A DNA stretch of 64,000 nucleotides from Dimorphilus gyrociliatus. Taxonomy: Eukaryota; Animalia; Annelida. The notes beneath the pieces were generated by a model, which saw only the letters and a program-made list of their open reading frames with translations, had not been told where the DNA came from and made no database searches. The stretch is from positions 1,666,916 through 1,730,915 of the forward strand of contig CAJFCJ010000020.1 in assembly GCA_904063045.1 (NCBI GenBank), read 5' to 3'. The position numbers and the translations under genes are program-made. Of this stretch, positions 43,284 to 55,938 are shown one piece after another (within the stretch, counting starts at the first letter, position 1; each line of letters begins with the position of its first letter).

Positions 43284-46200
43284 ATGTCGTTAGCAGGATT
43301 TAAGAAACAGATCAACAAGGCAAACCAGGTAATATCTCTATTAGTTATTAATACTACAGTCACATAATGTCAGTTGGCATTGTTAGCGTTCCCTATGTAG
43401 GCGTCCAATGGACGCCTCATATTTTACCATTTTACCCTAAATTACTTTTCTAAAAAAAAAACGTTTTTATTAACCCCGCTAATATCTTTGTTATCAATTA
43501 ATATTCCTTAATGCATAGTGTGTCTTTTGACAGTGAGTTAATTGATTGCCTTTCATTTTTTTAGTATATGAGCGAGAAGATTGGTGGTGCTAAAGGAACG
43601 GAGCTTGATTATGAATTTCAAGAAATGGAAAGGGTAAGCCTACTTTTACTATAGCTTATCAATAGTCACGATAAATTAGTCATTTTAATTGCGTCTCCTA
43701 ACGGGAAATTTTTGTTAGTCAAATTATCGATCCTCATCTCATGTAAGGAGTAGAAGAGAGAGGGTTAAGTTGATGGAAGCATGTTGTCTAGGATGATATT
43801 TGATTGCCTAACAAGGAAAACTATATTTTCAACATGAATATGTCTTCATAGCATTTATAAGACATTTTTGTATTTTCTGTAAACATTAACGAGTCTGAGT
43901 TTTTATATATATTTCAGAATTAGTCATTTTAGGCATAAACATGTGACTCATTTACAAATACTTTGACAATATCGTATTGAGGTTACCGATCTTCCTTGAA
44001 ATGGTTGTCCTAAAATACTTTGTAAAGCATAACTTGATACTCTAAGTCTGCCTACAGAGTTAATTCAGTAGAGTTAAGGGCAAATCGATATGTGAACGAT
44101 TGGCCATCAACTCAACACTTTTATAAGTAATAGGAAACGAGACAAACAATTTAAGCATCTAGATTGTAATTGTATTTTTTTATACTGTAAATTAAATATA
44201 TATGTATTTATCCGTATAGATAAAAATATCATTTACCTAATTTTAATAATTAATGAGTCTTTTTATTTACATGACTTAGTGAGTAACTTGTAGATTTATT
44301 CGCTGCTTTTAAATAAATAGGATAACCTTTTTATCGTAAATATCAGCACTATGGAATTATTGTTTGTACAATTACATGATTGTGCTTGAATTAGTTGGTC
44401 AATATGTATTGATTGCTCCTACAGAAAATAGATGTAATGGGAAAATTGGTGGATGAATTAATGTCAAGGACGCATGAATTATTGCAACCGAATCCAGGTA
44501 TTATTCTTTTAACTAACTAATTAACTTATTTGTTGTATTACTAATCATCTTAAAATGAAGGCTTGCTTGACGGCATAGGGAAACAAATGTAATTTTTTTT
44601 TGTAAAGTTCTGTGATTATCTTGTATTACATTTCCTACTCAGCAATATTGCCATTTGTTATTTTAAGTTCCATTTGATTTATTTAATTGATAACTTTACT
44701 AATTACTTTTAACAGCTTCAAGAGCAAAATTATCGGCTGTCAATTCGATATCTAAGCTTCGTGGAACAGCTAAGCACAATCCCTACCCTCAGCCTGAAGG
44801 TCAATTGGGTGATTGTATGACGAAGCATGGACGTGATTTGGGTGACGATTCACATTTCGGAAAAGTCCTTGTCGAAGTTGGCGATAGTTTAAGACAAATG
44901 GCTGATATTAAATACGCTCTAGACGACGCGGTTAAGCAGAATTTTATTGAGCCCCTGCATCATATGCAGACGAAAGATCTAAAGGAAGTGAACGTGAGTT
45001 TGACGGCGTGGGAACATTATCAATATGCCGAGTATGGCGGCGTCGTTTAGCTTGAGTCTGCTGAATTCGAGCGACGCATCGATCGATATGAAACGCCGCA
45101 CTTCCGCTATCTATAACGCTGATGCGGAATGGCGATCGACTTGCGTTAATCATATACATTTAATGTATAGCTATTTATAACTTACTTCCTTGTTTTTTAT
45201 TTTTAGCATCATCGCAAAAAGCTCTCTGGAAGACGATTGGATTACGACTGTAAGAAACGAAGGCAGGCGAAAGGTAATATTCCTTACTCTTAACACTTTT
45301 AAAAATTTACACAATTGAACTCTTCAAAGTTTATTTCGGCATTGAACTTGTATCTATCCACCAGGCGACTCGGAATTTCGCCTTATCATATTGACACAAA
45401 AGTAGGATGTGTGGTGATATGAAGTAAGATTTGCTGACAACAATATAATAACAAAAATAATATAATAACGCGCAAAATAAGATTGACATGCGAAATATGA
45501 CTATCTAAATAAGAAAATTATGTTTTAGTGAACTTTACGTATACAACGCCTGATTTGTGATTTTATTTTCAGGAGGTAAGACAATTGGACACAATCTATT
45601 TAAGTATTTTTACGGTGTAGCATGAAGGCTCCCACCTGTTGATAGAGTATTAAATAACGCTAATTAATGACCTACGCGGTGCTAATTTTTGTTCAATGTT
45701 AAGTTAATGTAGTGCGTTATCCGCTTGTTAAGAAGAATCGCATGATTTTTTTAAGCAGTAAAAAAATCTTTCTATTGCACTTCATTTAAGAAATAGCTTT
45801 GTGCTGATTGAAACTCAACTGACCTGTTCTCGCTATTATTAATTTTGATAACATTTTTTCAGAAATTTCATCAGGTATTATACATATATATAGAAATTGA
45901 TAATCATAAAAATGCATGATTATATGCATTGCGACTGAGTTGCCATATTGACACCAGAAGCATTAGAATGATTCAGACTAACATAAAAACTGCATTAATT
46001 GCAAAACTAAAAGACAAACTGAATTTCTTATCCCCATTTTTAAATGATTCGAAAATTGATTAGGCAAACAATAGGACTATATTAGCAAAAGACTAAAAGT
46101 ACAAAGTGATAGTTGTTTGTCTTAACAAACAAGTTCTGTGGAAGGCTTATTCCAATAGATAGTCAGAATTTAACAACGTTTTTATTTCATTTCTTGCAAC

Positions 46201-48582
46201 ATTCTTTTAGTTAATCAGTAAATATTTCATTCCTCATTGATAGGCCTTGATATTATCATTCATTTTCCTCGTTATCGTTCATAATTCATACGGTATGTAA
46301 TATATATATCATTTGACATGCTGGACATTCAGGCGATTCTTCCAGTCGTTCTAAATCGCCCATTCCGTTTGGTGAGTCCGAGCGCCGTCTGGTGGCTGTT
46401 TGCTTTTTTCCTTTCAACGTGCATAATTCTATTATTATTTATCATTCGTTACGTTCAACCAATTATCTTCTCTTTACCATACATTTTTAACGAAATTTGC
46501 TTATGCACTTGTTTTAATGGGTGTCGGGTTAATGAAAAAGTGCATGATATGATATGTTGCATGAACGACGAATGGACAGTCATTTTTCTGCACCCCTTTC
46601 TTACAAGAGCGTTAAATTTTATTTTATGAGAATAGTCTATCAGAAGTTCTTGTTGTTTAGATAGTGATTAATTACTGTTTATGAGTTGCATTTATTAGAA
46701 CCTTGTTTCCTATTACCCATCTCTTTTGCTAGGCTCGAACATCACCCAGGAAGAAATAACGCAAGCTGAGCAAAAATTTAGTGAATCAAAGGATTTAGCA
46801 GAAACCGCCATGTATAATATGTTGGAAAACGATGTAACTATTTCCTTACTAATATTATATAACTATTCTATTATAAACATTGGCTACGCTTTTTTATAGG
46901 TGGAGCATATATCACAACTGGGTGCATTCGTTGATGCTTATCTTTCATATCATAAGGATTCAGTTGAAATTTTAATGAATTTAAGCGAAACAGTTGAAAG
47001 GTTACGTAATGATGCTATGAGTAGACCTAGAAGTGAACATGTTCCAAAAAAGGTTTGCGTTAAAATTCTCTTTTTAAAAAGTTTGATATTTTAAATAATT
47101 AAATTTTATAGAATATGCTTGTAAGTATAAAGTGTTATAGACTTAGCTAAAATAGTAAAAGTACCGCACAAAATCCCATTCCTTTATAAGTCTAAATTTA
47201 AATGATCATTTGTATTTATTTAGGCTGTATCTGAAAATAACATTCAAAACTATGACAATGCCTTCGATGCCGTTGGTGAAAATAGTGGATACAGCTTATC
47301 ACCAGCTCCTCCGGCTTATAGCTCTGTTACTCCTACATCGCCATCTAAGAGTCCAGGTAAGAAGTAAAATAATGATTTAAGTAAATGATTGTCATTGTAA
47401 AACAAACATTATACAGTTGGTCAAGGACCACCAGCGCCAGGTACTTTATTCGTATTTTATGTAATATATATGGACTGTGCGCTAAAAAATTGTGGCAATA
47501 CTAAAATTTTGTATCTAATTTTTTTTTTACGCGATTTTAATAATATTTGTTCATAAATATATTTTAGTATTAGTAGTGATGAATATAGTAATGTGCGCAA
47601 AAGTCAAATAGCTCAAATTTTTTTCAAATGTTGGAAAAATAATTTTTCTTATATAACAACTGCAAAAAAAATGTGATGGCGGATATTTCTCTTCCTGAAA
47701 GCACATGTTTTAATATTAAACATAAGATAATCAGATCTATATATGGAACAACTTAATAACTATGAGTTCTTTTTCAACAATTGTCACTCTGTACTGACAT
47801 GGTCAGCGGAACAAAATTGATATTAGAAGAAAACAAAATAAGACGTCTTATCAGAAGAAGGCGGTCCTGCAAGAATTATTGCGATGATTATTAATGGCAC
47901 GACCTTCGTAAGGAAAAAAAGATATCTTCTAAGAAACCAGTGGTGGAAGCAGTGTGATGATATGAAGAAGAGTTTCCTATCATAAGGTTTGACTTCCCTT
48001 GCATTTGATTGACGGAGGATAAACGAAGAGGAGATAATTCAAGACTTTTTCATTCCATCTGTTTATGCTCTCTATGGTCTACACTGTATTCTGACGCAGG
48101 ATGGAGCAACTATGAATAGGGCTCGGTGCATTTTTTATATATCAAAGAAAAATCTTTGATCTAAAATTTTTTGAAAAAGTCTGATTCCTTAGAAATTTTG
48201 AAAATATTACTATATTCATCATCACTAACACTAGTACAATTGTCAACAAAATATTACCACTGCCACAATTATTTTGTGTACTGTATGTGGTTTAGTATTA
48301 GAGCATGCGATAGTTATTTGAGGGCTGATGCTATCTAGTGATGCCTAAAACTAGACTTTATATGGTCTTTATAATACAATCACGTTTTAATCTGTAGGAC
48401 GCCAGCCGTGTTGCCGAGCGATGTTCGATTTCGAGCCAGAAAATGAGGGAGAATTGGGCTTTAGGGAGGGCGATTTGATTACTCTCGTGCAGCGTATAGA
48501 CGAAAATTGGTATGAGGGAACGCTGAATGGAAAGACGGGCTTCTTCCCATGTAACTACGTTAAAGTCCTTGTTGACGTCTAG
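43284..48582 (+). CDS. SH3GL: Endophilin A (N-BAR plus SH3); core exons 43284-43328, 43565-43633, 44425-44497, 44716-44993, 45207-45273, 46733-46833, 46900-47052, 47224-47356, 47417-47440, 48398-48582
   Basis: [15 protein letters not shown]|[21 protein letters not shown]|[36 protein letters not shown], and SH3 [22 protein letters not shown]...IDENWYEG...[11 protein letters not shown]. Confidence 0.96.
45573..45575 (+). other. Candidate 3-nt microexon (GAG) of endophilin A
   Basis: cctgat...ttttattttcAG|GAG|GTAAGA: branch point, pyrimidine tract and consensus donor; preserves phase 1. Confidence 0.55.
45863..45874 (+). other. Candidate 12-nt microexon of endophilin A
   Basis: attttttcAG|AAATTTCATCAG|GTATTA; phase 1-1 and stop-free (E-I-S-S). 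The donor is identical to the constitutive exon 3 donor of the same gene. Confidence 0.5.
46333..46371 (+). other. Candidate 39-nt cassette exon of endophilin A
   Basis: ttgacaTGCtggacattcAG|GCGATT...GTTTG|GTGAGT; phase 1-1 and stop-free ([13 protein letters not shown]). Confidence 0.55.
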
Positions 48583-49159
48583 AAAGGACATAATAAAAAT
48601 ATATAAATATATATAAAACTATATATATACTTATATAAATATATTTAAATTGAACATATGCACTTGCATATGTATAGTTGTATATAAGCATGTAGACATC
48701 ATTTCTGCATGTTTATGTACACGCAGACATACATTTAATTATATATCTCTAGGTGACGAGGCAAATACGTATGCAAATCAGTGCCTCTCCACCTACAAGA
48801 AGTAGTGTGTCGGGTGTCTGTACAAGTTTCTCGCGCAATAATGCATTCCAGTCTTACATTGATGTTGTGACTCTTCGTTGTCCTTTCGTCGTAACTAAAT
48901 TGTACAAATGAATTTAGATTCCTCGCACGCTTTACGTGTTTTACTTTCTTTACATTGCATTACCAATCTTAAAGTTTAACGTTTTATTTTTGTGCTCAAA
49001 CATTCGAATACAGTCAGATTAAAATCTCTAACAAAAGTCTTTACTTTGAGAAAGAATTGAAAATTCTTCTGGTGAAATTTCGATTATTATACACAATCCT
49101 GCCTTAATAATTAATTCACAACGGCAGTTGCACACTTCACAATGCAGCACCTGTCATTC

Positions 49160-55392: not shown

Positions 55393-55938
55393 ATGGAGCT
55401 TGAGCCCATCTTTCATAAAAAAGCAGAGTATATAGAAACAGCTTCTGGTAATAAGGTTAGCCGGCAGTCAGTTCTATGCGGGAGTCAGAATATTGTACTA
55501 AACGGAAAAACTATAGTAATGTCAGATTGTGTAGTTCGAGGTGATTTAGCTAATGTACGGATTGGAAGACACTGTGTAATAGGAAAAAATACTGTTGTTC
55601 GACCTCCATTCAAGAAGTATAATAAAGGCTTCGCTTTTTTTCCCCTCCATATCGGTGATTACGTTATGATCGAAGAGGACTGTGTTATAAACGCCGCTCA
55701 GATTGGTTCCTACGTACATATCGGAAAAAATTGTGTAATTGGAAGAAGATGCGTCCTAAAAGACTGCTGTGCAATAGCAGACAATACAATTTTACCGCCA
55801 GAAACAGTTGTTCCCCCCTTTACGCTCTTCTCCGGAAGTCCCGGAGTTTTTACAGATGAACTTCCAGAATGTACTCAAGATTTAATGATTGATGTCACAA
55901 GAAGCTTCTACAGTAATTTTAAACCCTTATCCAGCTGA
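55393..55938 (+). CDS. DCTN5: Dynactin subunit 5 (p25), intronless
   Basis: [51 protein letters not shown]...[46 protein letters not shown] (left-handed beta-helix). Confidence 0.98.

What the first reader, a model, noticed from the sequence alone, without database searches (positions are those of the whole stretch)
45274..46732. Combinatorial microexon cassette with RBFOX motifs at the endophilin A BAR-domain tip
Seen: the 1.46-kb phase-1 intron after ...DCKKRRQAK holds three frame-preserving, G-ending candidate exons (3, 12 and 39 nt). Each is followed by (T)GCATG (45620, 45740, 45913, 46541, 46558); three are full TGCATG versus about 0.2 expected by my rough estimate. Known: downstream UGCAUG is the RBFOX inclusion-enhancing position; the basic KKR..K cluster at the BAR tip contacts membranes; endophilin B1 has neuron-specific BAR inserts (recalled). 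Inference: up to 8 isoforms tuning membrane curvature or binding in neurons, all invisible to ORF-based annotation. This is my best candidate for an undescribed system here.
Basis: partly seen in the sequence, partly recalled or inferred. Interest (0 to 1): 0.8.

Follow-up and report, generated by a model that had tools for sequence, protein, structure and literature searches.

The report
Tiny exons at endophilin's membrane tip
One intron of a small marine worm's endophilin-A gene holds a real three-letter exon that is present in its mRNA, plus two conserved exon-like units next to splicing-control motifs; all three would change the membrane-touching tip of the protein, but only the three-letter exon is proven so far.

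Summary
The gene is endophilin-A (BAR + SH3, 9 exons). The phase-1 intron is 45274-46732, and the three G-ending candidate exons and five GCATG motifs lie where stated.

- **3-nt exon (GAG, 45573-45575): real.** RNA contigs from three studies and two lineages read exon 5 + GAG + exon 6.
- **12-nt and 39-nt candidates: no spliced support in these contigs.** In a related species each sits in an island 93-97% identical, against about 73% for the whole intron. The 39-nt unit is 39/39 identical. Four of the five GCATG are conserved.
- **New: RNA pairing.** Both splice sites of the 39-nt unit are complementary to conserved upstream boxes. Box A with box C gives -35.8 kcal/mol, reached by 0 of 3000 shuffles.
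- **New: other phyla.** The homologous phase-1 intron holds an annotated alternative microexon in a sea star (6 nt) and in the rotifer relative Seison (9 nt). A beetle isoform has a 15-aa insert at the same site. The site is the loop at the BAR tip.

Verdict: a real microexon site that recurs across phyla, with one proven exon and two probable regulated ones. Eight isoforms, neuron specificity and RBFOX control remain untested. Earlier notes of this scan report similar tiny exons and intron pairings elsewhere in this genome.

The parts
45207..45273 (+). Exon 5 of endophilin-A ([22 protein letters not shown] plus first base of a Gly codon)
   Evidence: Contig joints 44993>45207 in X1, X2 and X5; aligns to human SH3GL2/3 BAR chains.
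45274..46732 (+). Phase-1 intron (1459 nt) that hosts the microexon site
   Evidence: the homologous phase-1 intron is present in the sea star (L082) and Seison (L083).
45357..45383 (+). Box A: conserved GC-rich box 84-110 nt into the intron. It is complementary to box C and, alternatively, to the 3' splice site and 5' half of the 39-nt unit
   Evidence: Duplex with box C is -35.8 kcal/mol, 0 of 3000 arm shuffles reach it, and box C is the best partner among 530 GC-rich windows. Duplex with 46330-46351 is -23.1, 0 of 2000 shuffles. Box A is identical in L076.
45573..45575 (+). 3-nt microexon GAG; with the flanking bases it adds one Gly (KGS becomes KGGS)
   Evidence: RNA contigs of X1 and X2, and a loose end of X5, read exon 5 + GAG + exon 6. 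It is the only AG|GAG|GT in the intron. The splice sites are conserved in L076.
45557..45695 (+). Conserved island around and downstream of the 3-nt exon, holding GCATG at 45620
   Evidence: 95% identical to L076 over 139 nt, against 72.6% for the whole intron and 84-86% for exons 5 and 6.
45731..45746 (+). Box B: conserved box that contains GCATG (45740) and is complementary to the 3' splice site of the 39-nt unit
   Evidence: Duplex with 46328-46343 is -18.5 kcal/mol with 10 contiguous pairs; P 0.0005 against arm shuffles. Conserved in L076.
45863..45874 (+). 12-nt candidate microexon (would add EISS)
   Evidence: cag|...G|gtatta, in frame. It lies in the island 45832-45888, 93% identical to L076, with a conserved TGCATG 39 nt downstream. 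No spliced RNA was seen.
45913..45918 (+). TGCATG downstream of the 12-nt unit
   Evidence: conserved in L076.
46333..46371 (+). 39-nt candidate exon (would add [13 protein letters not shown])
   Evidence: cag|...G|gtgagt, in frame. 39 of 39 identical in L076, within the island 46294-46415 at 96.7%. TGC lies 12-14 nt upstream of the AG. No spliced RNA was seen; an unspliced 250-nt contig covers it in X1.
46370..46396 (+). Box C: covers the 5' splice site of the 39-nt unit and the next 20 nt; complementary to box A
   Evidence: identical in L076.
46558..46563 (+). TGCATG 187 nt downstream of the 39-nt unit (conserved). The nearby copy at 46541-46546 is not conserved
46733..46833 (+). Exon 6 ([16 protein letters not shown]...)
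   Evidence: Contig joints; PDB alignment; Pfam BAR.

Best explanation
The intron after exon 5 of endophilin-A is a microexon site in the loop at the tip of the BAR domain. Shown: a 3-nt exon (GAG) is spliced into the mRNA and appears to be the dominant or constitutive form, giving KGGS. A 3-nt exon is too short for exon definition, so it must be joined in two ordered steps, in the manner of a recursive splice site that leaves a 3-nt scar; this ordering is inferred. The 140-nt conserved stretch downstream, with a GCAUG at +45, is its likely intronic enhancer. Inferred: the 12-nt and 39-nt units are regulated cassette exons, silent in bulk RNA and included in some cell type or stage. They would add Ser-rich peptides (EISS; [13 protein letters not shown]) next to the basic KKRR..K membrane-binding cluster. 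The 39-nt unit looks clamped by RNA structure. Box B pairs with its 3' splice site, and box A pairs either with that site or with its 5' splice site (box C). Inclusion would then need the clamps opened. Two routes are plausible: a protein binding the GCAUG inside box B, or prior removal of the upstream intron piece that carries box A. Conserved downstream (U)GCAUG motifs suggest RBFOX-type enhancement.
For: - **3-nt exon in RNA.** X1 and X2 contigs join 45274 to 46731 with no letters between, which is exon 5 + GAG + exon 6. An X5 contig continues after 45274 with AGGCTCG.... These are three studies and two lineages.
- **Source of the GAG.** It is the only AG|GAG|GT in the intron.
- **Conservation in L076.** Islands are 93-97% identical, the whole intron 72.6%, exons 5 and 6 84-86%. 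The 39-nt unit is 39/39 identical, and 4 of 5 GCATG are conserved.
- **Pairing A with C.** -35.8 kcal/mol. It is the best pair in the intron: 0 of 25 intron shuffles and 0 of 3000 arm shuffles reach it, and box C beats all 530 GC-rich windows of the 64 kb.
- **Other pairings.** Box B with the 3' splice site has P 0.0005; box A with the 3' splice site region has 0 of 2000 shuffles.
- **Same site in other animals.** Sea star: 6-nt microexon, isoforms with and without AG. Seison: 9-nt microexon, isoforms SGG and IGEGGG. Beetle: 15-aa insert.
- **Location.** Loop 172-178 between helices 103-171 and 179-248 in the sea-star model.
- **This intron is retained, others are not.** In X5 depth is 115 against 630-830 for exons, and the other introns are at 0.
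Against: - No contig in four runs shows the 12-nt or 39-nt unit spliced in. Contigs drop rare forms, so this is weak evidence of absence.
- The 12-nt unit lies inside a roughly 400-nt block (45544-45950) that is conserved throughout. Its own conservation therefore does not separate 'exon' from 'enhancer of the 3-nt exon'.
- There is only one alignable relative and the boxes are identical in it, so no compensatory changes test the pairings.
- Conservation is not unique to these islands: intron 4 is 95% identical and exons 1-4 are 94-98%.
- The count of exon-like units is not unusual against the window's background rate.
- The sea-star intron shows only about 1.5-fold GCATG enrichment and no comparable pairing near its microexon.
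- Alternative use of the 3-nt exon was not seen.
Confidence: 0.55

Rival explanations
1. Only the 3-nt exon is real. The other conserved islands, the GCAUG motifs and the pairings are the extended intronic machinery needed to recognise and splice a 3-nt exon, and the 12-nt and 39-nt 'exons' are chance AG..GT frames inside that machinery. The gene makes one isoform at this site.
For: Only the +GAG form is seen. The 12-nt unit lies in a continuous conserved block downstream of the 3-nt exon. Frame-preserving AG..GT units are common: 38 in this intron and 0.95 per kb under the strict filter.
Against: The 39-nt island lies 720 nt from the 3-nt exon and is separated from it by unalignable sequence. 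It is centred on a unit with CAG and GTGAGT sites and an open frame, and it is 39/39 identical. Both of its splice sites, rather than those of the 3-nt exon, are the targets of the complementary boxes. Other phyla do splice alternatively at this site.
Confidence: 0.3
2. The conserved islands are not splicing elements. They would be an intron-hosted non-coding RNA or a transcriptional enhancer, and the discrete unspliced RNA over 46229-46477 is its product.
For: X1 holds a 250-nt unspliced contig over the 39-nt island at depth 7.6, similar to exon contigs, while the rest of the intron has none. A TATA-like run lies upstream and a T6 run downstream.
Against: There is no Rfam match at E of 1 or below. 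Local folding is no better than shuffles on either strand (z -0.1 and -0.5). The ORF over the island has no protein relatives apart from the same stretch in L076. In X5 the whole downstream intron is covered, as expected of slow splicing.
Confidence: 0.1
3. The extra GAG is not an exon. It would come from a non-canonical TA..CT splice, or from a 3-nt insertion in the sequenced strains.
For: The aligner wrote the joint as 45274>46731 with ends TA..CT.
Against: X2 matches the window with 0 mismatches across exons 4-7, so it is the same strain or species. The relative's genome (L076) also lacks GAG at either exon end, yet the closely related X5 mRNA has it. A perfect cag|GAG|gtaaga lies in the intron and is conserved.
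Confidence: 0.03

Closest known systems
Annotated endophilin-A isoforms of Acanthaster planci (XP_022105874 vs XP_022105876), Seison nebaliae (KAI3382022 vs KAI3382023) and Dendroctonus ponderosae (isoforms X14, X15, X17)
   Same: Same protein, same phase-1 intron after ...QAK, same loop. There is a 6-nt microexon CAGGTG in the sea star (L082:15664-15669) and a 9-nt microexon in Seison (L083:1064-1072), each with isoforms that include or lack it. The beetle has a 15-aa Ser/Pro-rich insert.
   Different: Those are single events found in gene models only, and I found no paper that describes them. Here the tiny exon is 3 nt and looks constitutive. Two further conserved units, GCAUG motifs and long-range pairings share the intron. 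The exon sequences are not alignable between phyla, so common descent versus repeated origin is open.
Endophilin-B (SH3GLB1/Bif-1, fly EndoB, worm erp-1) BAR-domain neural microexon
   Same: A paralogous N-BAR protein with a small alternative exon inside the BAR domain. The EndoB exon is eMIC/SRRM-dependent and lies at the same position in fly and mouse (PMC8797185; PMC6013970; erp-1 exon 6 in bioRxiv 10.64898/2026.09.14.751627).
   Different: It is a different paralog. I did not test whether the insertion point in the fold is the same. Regulation there is shown by experiment; here it is only inferred.
RBFOX-enhanced microexons (downstream UGCAUG; Li et al. 2015, cited in PMC8797185) and eMIC-type 3' splice sites (UGC near the AG)
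   Same: A conserved (U)GCAUG lies downstream of each unit (+45, +39, +187). The 39-nt unit has UGC 12-14 nt before its AG. Earlier notes of this scan, not checked by me, report an Rbfox gene and an eMIC gene in this genome.
   Different: There are no binding or knock-down data. The 3-nt and 12-nt units lack a UGC within 40 nt upstream. One GCAUG lies inside a pairing box, so it may serve structure rather than protein binding.
Conserved long-range intron pairings that control splicing (RNA bridges, docking/selector systems; PMC8052449, PMC10790352), and the CASK intron pairings noted earlier in this genome
   Same: GC-rich complementary boxes about 1 kb apart in an AT-rich intron, conserved, overlapping splice sites, with alternative partners for one box.
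   Different: No covariation is available, and the exon that would be controlled has not yet been seen in RNA.
Recursive splice sites and other 3-nt exons (for example the three 3-nt SOWAH exons noted earlier in this genome)
   Same: A 3' splice site almost abutting a strong 5' splice site (cag|GAG|gtaaga). Splicing must run in two ordered steps.
   Different: It leaves 3 nt in the mRNA, unlike a zero-length ratchet point. The order of the two steps is not resolved by contigs.

Membership tests
Endophilin-A (SH3GL-type N-BAR + SH3 protein) | BAR domain with best similarity to SH3GL1-3 | tested here: met
   Exon 4 matches Pfam BAR at 1.7e-19. PDB best hits are SH3GL3 at 2.6e-29 and SH3GL2 at 1.2e-25. 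Exons 5-6 align to the same chains.
Endophilin-A (SH3GL-type N-BAR + SH3 protein) | C-terminal SH3 domain after a variable linker | tested here: met
   The last exon matches SH3_2, SH3_9 and SH3_1 at 6e-16 to 1e-14. The spliced model is 368 aa.
Microexon (cassette exon of 3-51 nt) | Canonical AG and GT flanks, frame kept | tested here: met
   All three units meet this.
Microexon (cassette exon of 3-51 nt) | Present in mature mRNA | tested here: inconclusive
   Met for the 3-nt exon (X1, X2, X5). Not seen for the 12-nt and 39-nt units, but only contigs of four runs were available, and contigs drop rare forms.
Microexon (cassette exon of 3-51 nt) | Alternative use (both forms observed) | tested here: not met
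   Only the +GAG form was seen at this junction. Raw reads were not available. The gene's 24-nt exon at 47417-47440 does show both forms.
Microexon (cassette exon of 3-51 nt) | Exon and flanks more conserved than surrounding intron | tested here: met
   Islands are 93-97% identical and the whole intron 72.6%, in one relative.
RBFOX-regulated exon | (U)GCAUG within a few hundred nt downstream, conserved | tested here: met
   Copies lie at +45, +39 and +187, and 4 of 5 are conserved. Enrichment has P about 0.01.
RBFOX-regulated exon | Inclusion depends on RBFOX | not testable with these tools
   Needs knock-down, motif mutation or CLIP.
eMIC (SRRM3/4)-dependent neural microexon | UGC close to the 3' splice site | tested here: inconclusive
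   Present 12-14 nt before the AG of the 39-nt unit. Absent within 40 nt upstream of the 3-nt and 12-nt units. The motif rule is taken from PMC8797185.
eMIC (SRRM3/4)-dependent neural microexon | Neuron-restricted inclusion | not testable with these tools
   No tissue-resolved reads were available.
Long-range RNA pairing that controls splicing | Complementarity beyond chance between distant intron boxes | tested here: met
   Box A with box C gives -35.8 kcal/mol. 0 of 25 intron shuffles and 0 of 3000 arm shuffles reach it, and it is the best of 530 GC-rich windows. Box B with the 3' splice site has P 0.0005.
Long-range RNA pairing that controls splicing | Conservation with compensatory changes | tested here: inconclusive
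   Both boxes are identical in the only alignable relative, so they are conserved but give no covariation.
Long-range RNA pairing that controls splicing | Disruption and restoration change splicing | not testable with these tools
   Needs minigene experiments.

The most novel reading that the evidence does not exclude
The endophilin-A BAR-tip loop is an old bilaterian microexon hot-spot, seen in an annelid, Seison, a sea star and a beetle. In this worm it has grown into a three-unit cassette of 3, 12 and 39 nt. The larger, Ser-rich inserts would be switched on in particular cells by RBFOX-type sites and by opening RNA clamps that mask both splice sites of the 39-nt exon. That would place phosphorylatable serines beside the basic membrane-binding cluster and so tune membrane binding.
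Probability: 0.3. Interest if true: 0.75.

Novelty: new member of a known kind. Interest (0 to 1): 0.58.

Why it matters
Endophilin-A is a core endocytic and synaptic-vesicle protein, and its BAR tip carries basic residues that touch the membrane. The paper library I searched describes regulated BAR microexons for endophilin-B only. Here the same loop of endophilin-A is edited by tiny exons in at least three phyla, and in this worm by a 3-nt exon that ordinary gene models and aligners miss. If the two larger units are used, they offer a compact natural system of about 1.5 kb for studying two things: how RNA structure and GCAUG sites select very small exons, and how inserts at the BAR tip change membrane binding. 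In practice, the correct protein here reads KGGS rather than KGS.

Tried and rejected
- **Placozoan origin.** I guessed this from the AT-rich compact genome. I rejected it because the window's dynactin-5 is 83% identical to Capitella and only 72% to Trichoplax. Earlier notes name Dimorphilus gyrociliatus; I did not verify the species.
- **Metagenome scan for spliced forms.** A degenerate exon 5-gap-exon 6 / 39-nt pattern gave 74 loci. All are chance hits on GC-rich (median 60%) prokaryote-type contigs, with no similarity to the mRNA. Two carry 'human gut metagenome' in their names. I take them for bacterial and did nothing further with them.
- **The closest relative's contig.** P0001 is 98% identical, but its contig has no DNA on hand.
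- **Word search with the intron ORF.** It found only L076, so there is one alignable relative; L076 to L079 are identical.
- **Other distant loci.**
  - The beetle and Pomacea loci are not on record.
  - The mite-like L081 has a 77-nt intron without a microexon.
  - L080 ends before exon 5.
- **Rfam.** Nothing in the intron.
- **Local folds of the 39-nt island.** No better than shuffles.
- **Exon 5 pairing with the 39-nt unit.** Not significant (P 0.27).
- **Sea-star intron.** No comparable pairing near its microexon. An energy scan of it timed out.
- **Other protein clusters.** No further isoform differences at the site.


Full report
**What is there**

The window is AT-rich (about 32% G+C) and gene-dense. 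The finding lies in a 9-exon endophilin-A gene on the + strand, running from the ATG at 43284 to the stop at 48582. I rebuilt the model from contig joints and translation.
- Exon 4 matches Pfam BAR at 1.7e-19, and the last exon is an SH3 domain.
- The best solved relatives are human SH3GL3 and SH3GL2.
- Exon 5 ends at 45273 in phase 1 after ...DCKKRRQAK, and exon 6 starts at 46733, so the intron is 1459 nt.

**Is it more than chance?**

- *GCATG.* The intron holds 5 of the 27 GCATG and 3 of the 9 TGCATG on the + strand of the whole 64 kb. Dinucleotide shuffles give P of about 0.01 and 0.017. No other 1459-nt stretch of the window on either strand has more.
- *Exon-like units.* Their number alone is not persuasive. 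There are 38 frame-preserving AG..GT units of 60 nt or less. With a stricter splice-site filter there are 4, against 0.57 in shuffles, but the window's own background is 0.95 per kb.

**RNA evidence**

One search and one laying of contigs were allowed. Only Logan contigs were available, not raw reads.

*The 3-nt exon.*
- Contigs of two metatranscriptomes cross the junction: X1, and X2, which has 0 mismatches to the window over exons 4-7.
- Both were written as a joint 45274>46731 that 'skips 1456, TA..CT' with no letters between.
- Read out, that is ...AAAG + G + AG + GCTCG..., which is exon 5 + GAG + exon 6.
- A third run, X5, comes from a lineage about 5% diverged. Its contig ends at 45274 and continues AGGCTCG..., which is the same three extra letters.
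- The intron holds exactly one AG|GAG|GT, at 45573-45575. It has a 12-of-17 pyrimidine tract, CAG and GTAAGA.
- The genome of a relative (L076) lacks GAG at either exon end but keeps the intronic site.
- The 3-nt microexon is therefore real.

*The 12-nt and 39-nt units.* No contig shows either one spliced in. Contigs drop minor forms, so this is not evidence of absence.

*Intron coverage.*
- In X5 the intron downstream of GAG is covered at depth 115, against 630-830 for exons, while every other intron of the gene has none.
- X1 holds an isolated unspliced 250-nt contig over 46229-46477.

**Comparison with a relative**

A word search with exon 4 and a full HMMER search led to a 47-kb Logan contig, L076. 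Its BAR domain is 98-100% identical at the protein level.

| Region | Nucleotide identity to L076 |
|---|---|
| Exons 5-8 | 84-88% |
| Intron, whole | 72.6%, with parts unalignable |
| 45557-45695 (GAG exon plus 120 nt downstream) | 95% |
| 45832-45888 (12-nt unit) | 93% |
| 46294-46415 (39-nt unit, itself 39/39 identical) | 96.7% |
| Smaller conserved islands at 45350-45387, 45759-45813, 46051-46089, 46424-46463 and 46662-46692 | not itemised here |

Four of the five GCATG are conserved, and each unit has one downstream, at +45, +39 and +187. The copy at 46542 is lost.

Caveats:
- There is only one alignable relative; L076 to L079 are identical.
- The 12-nt unit lies in a block (45544-45950) that is conserved throughout.
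- Intron 4 and exons 1-4 are also 94-98% identical.

- *Box A with box C.* Box A (45357-45383) is complementary to box C (46370-46396), which covers the 5' splice site of the 39-nt unit. The duplex is -35.8 kcal/mol.
  - It is the strongest pair in the intron, and 0 of 25 dinucleotide shuffles of the intron reach it.
  - 0 of 3000 shuffles of either arm reach it.
  - Box C beats all 530 GC-rich windows of the 64 kb by about 9 kcal/mol.
- *Box A, alternative partner.* Box A can instead pair with the 3' splice site and 5' half of the same unit, at -23.1 kcal/mol with 0 of 2000 shuffles.
- *Box B.* Box B (45731-45746) contains the GCATG at 45740. It pairs with that 3' splice site at -18.5 kcal/mol, P 0.0005.
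- *Conservation.* All the boxes are identical in L076, so they are conserved but give no covariation.
- *Local structure.* The 39-nt island folds no better than shuffles on either strand, and Rfam finds nothing. This argues against a self-contained structured RNA.

**Other animals**

Alternative isoforms differ at exactly this site in three other lineages.
- *Acanthaster planci.* Isoforms read ...KKQAK[AG]GSTISEEE with or without AG. The homologous phase-1 intron (5074 nt) holds cag|CAGGTG|gtatgt.
- *Seison nebaliae.* Isoforms read SGG or IGEGGG. They are explained by a 9-nt unit, cag|TTGGCGAGG|gtgaga, in a 253-nt phase-1 intron.
- *Dendroctonus ponderosae.* Isoforms X14, X15 and X17 carry a 15-aa Ser/Pro-rich insert that Onthophagus lacks.
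- *Vertebrates.* Vertebrate endophilins have the shortest loop, 4 residues shorter than here.

An AlphaFold model of the sea-star protein (mean pLDDT 82) places the site in the 7-residue loop 172-178 between helices 103-171 and 179-248. That is the distal tip of the BAR.

I found no paper on endophilin-A microexons. The paralog endophilin-B has a documented microexon conserved between fly and mouse (PMC8797185), and an alternative BAR exon in C. elegans erp-1.

**How it most likely works**

*Shown.* GAG is spliced in and gives KGGS.

*Inferred.*
- A 3-nt exon cannot be defined across itself, so the two flanking introns must be removed in order.
- The long conserved downstream stretch with GCAUG at +45 is its enhancer.
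- The retention of this intron alone fits slow two-step splicing.
- The 12-nt unit (EISS) and the 39-nt unit ([13 protein letters not shown]) are probably regulated cassette exons, silent in bulk RNA.
- The 39-nt unit is masked at both splice sites by boxes A and B.
- Because box A lies in the upstream sub-intron, fast removal of that piece, or a protein on the GCAUG of box B, would unmask the unit.
- The Ser-rich inserts beside KKRR..K suggest charge or phospho-tuning of membrane binding. This last point is speculative.

*My odds.*

| Claim | Probability |
|---|---|
| 3-nt exon is real | about 0.95 |
| 39-nt unit is used somewhere | about 0.6 |
| 12-nt unit is used somewhere | about 0.45 |
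| RNA clamps are functional | about 0.5 |
| RBFOX control | about 0.4 |

**Organism**

Earlier notes of this scan name the annelid Dimorphilus gyrociliatus and report eMIC and Rbfox genes, other 3-nt exons and a similar intron-pairing layout in CASK. I did not verify these. My only check is that the window's dynactin-5 is closest to Capitella, at 83%.

**Limits**

- Contigs only, and a single read-laying run.
- One relative.
- Run identities are coded.

Noticed in passing
window 47417-47440: A 24-nt alternative microexon in the BAR-SH3 linker, which adds VGQGPPAP. It is included in the X1 contig and skipped in the X2 and X5 contigs. Its peptide is conserved in L076. This is direct proof that the gene does use alternative microexons.
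   Followed up: partly
window 44994-45206 (intron 4): A GC-rich 213-nt intron that is 94.9% identical to the relative, more than exons 5-8. Two of its segments (44981-45014 and 45105-45142) are complementary to the 39-nt unit and box C region, at -32.0 and -34.7 kcal/mol (P 0.007 and 0.017). There is no Rfam hit. It may be part of the same pairing network.
   Followed up: partly
window 46229-46477 and 45574-46760: Unspliced RNA contigs cover this intron only. X1 holds an isolated 250-nt piece over the 39-nt island at exon-like depth. X5 holds the whole stretch downstream of GAG at about 15% of exon depth, starting within a base of the microexon. All other introns of the gene have zero depth.
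   Followed up: partly
window 46113-46131: A small conserved hairpin: an 8-bp stem (TTGTTTGT / ACAAACAA) whose stem is kept in L076 while the 4-nt loop differs. It lies in the conserved island between the 12-nt and 39-nt units.
   Followed up: no
window 48667-48738 (- strand): A weak mir-297-like Rfam match in the 3'UTR (38 bits against a gathering score of 90) on TA/CA-rich low-complexity sequence. Probably chance.
   Followed up: no
alignment A1 (P0028, P0169, P0170, P0064), exon 6/7 junction: Dendroctonus endophilin-A isoforms carry three extra residues (DVS) after ...NLLEND that Onthophagus isoform X7 lacks. This suggests a second small alternative exon at the next intron in insects.
   Followed up: no
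window 55393-55935: An intronless dynactin subunit 5 gene (181 aa). It is 83% identical to Capitella teleta and 97% to a Logan protein of the same relative as L076.
   Followed up: partly
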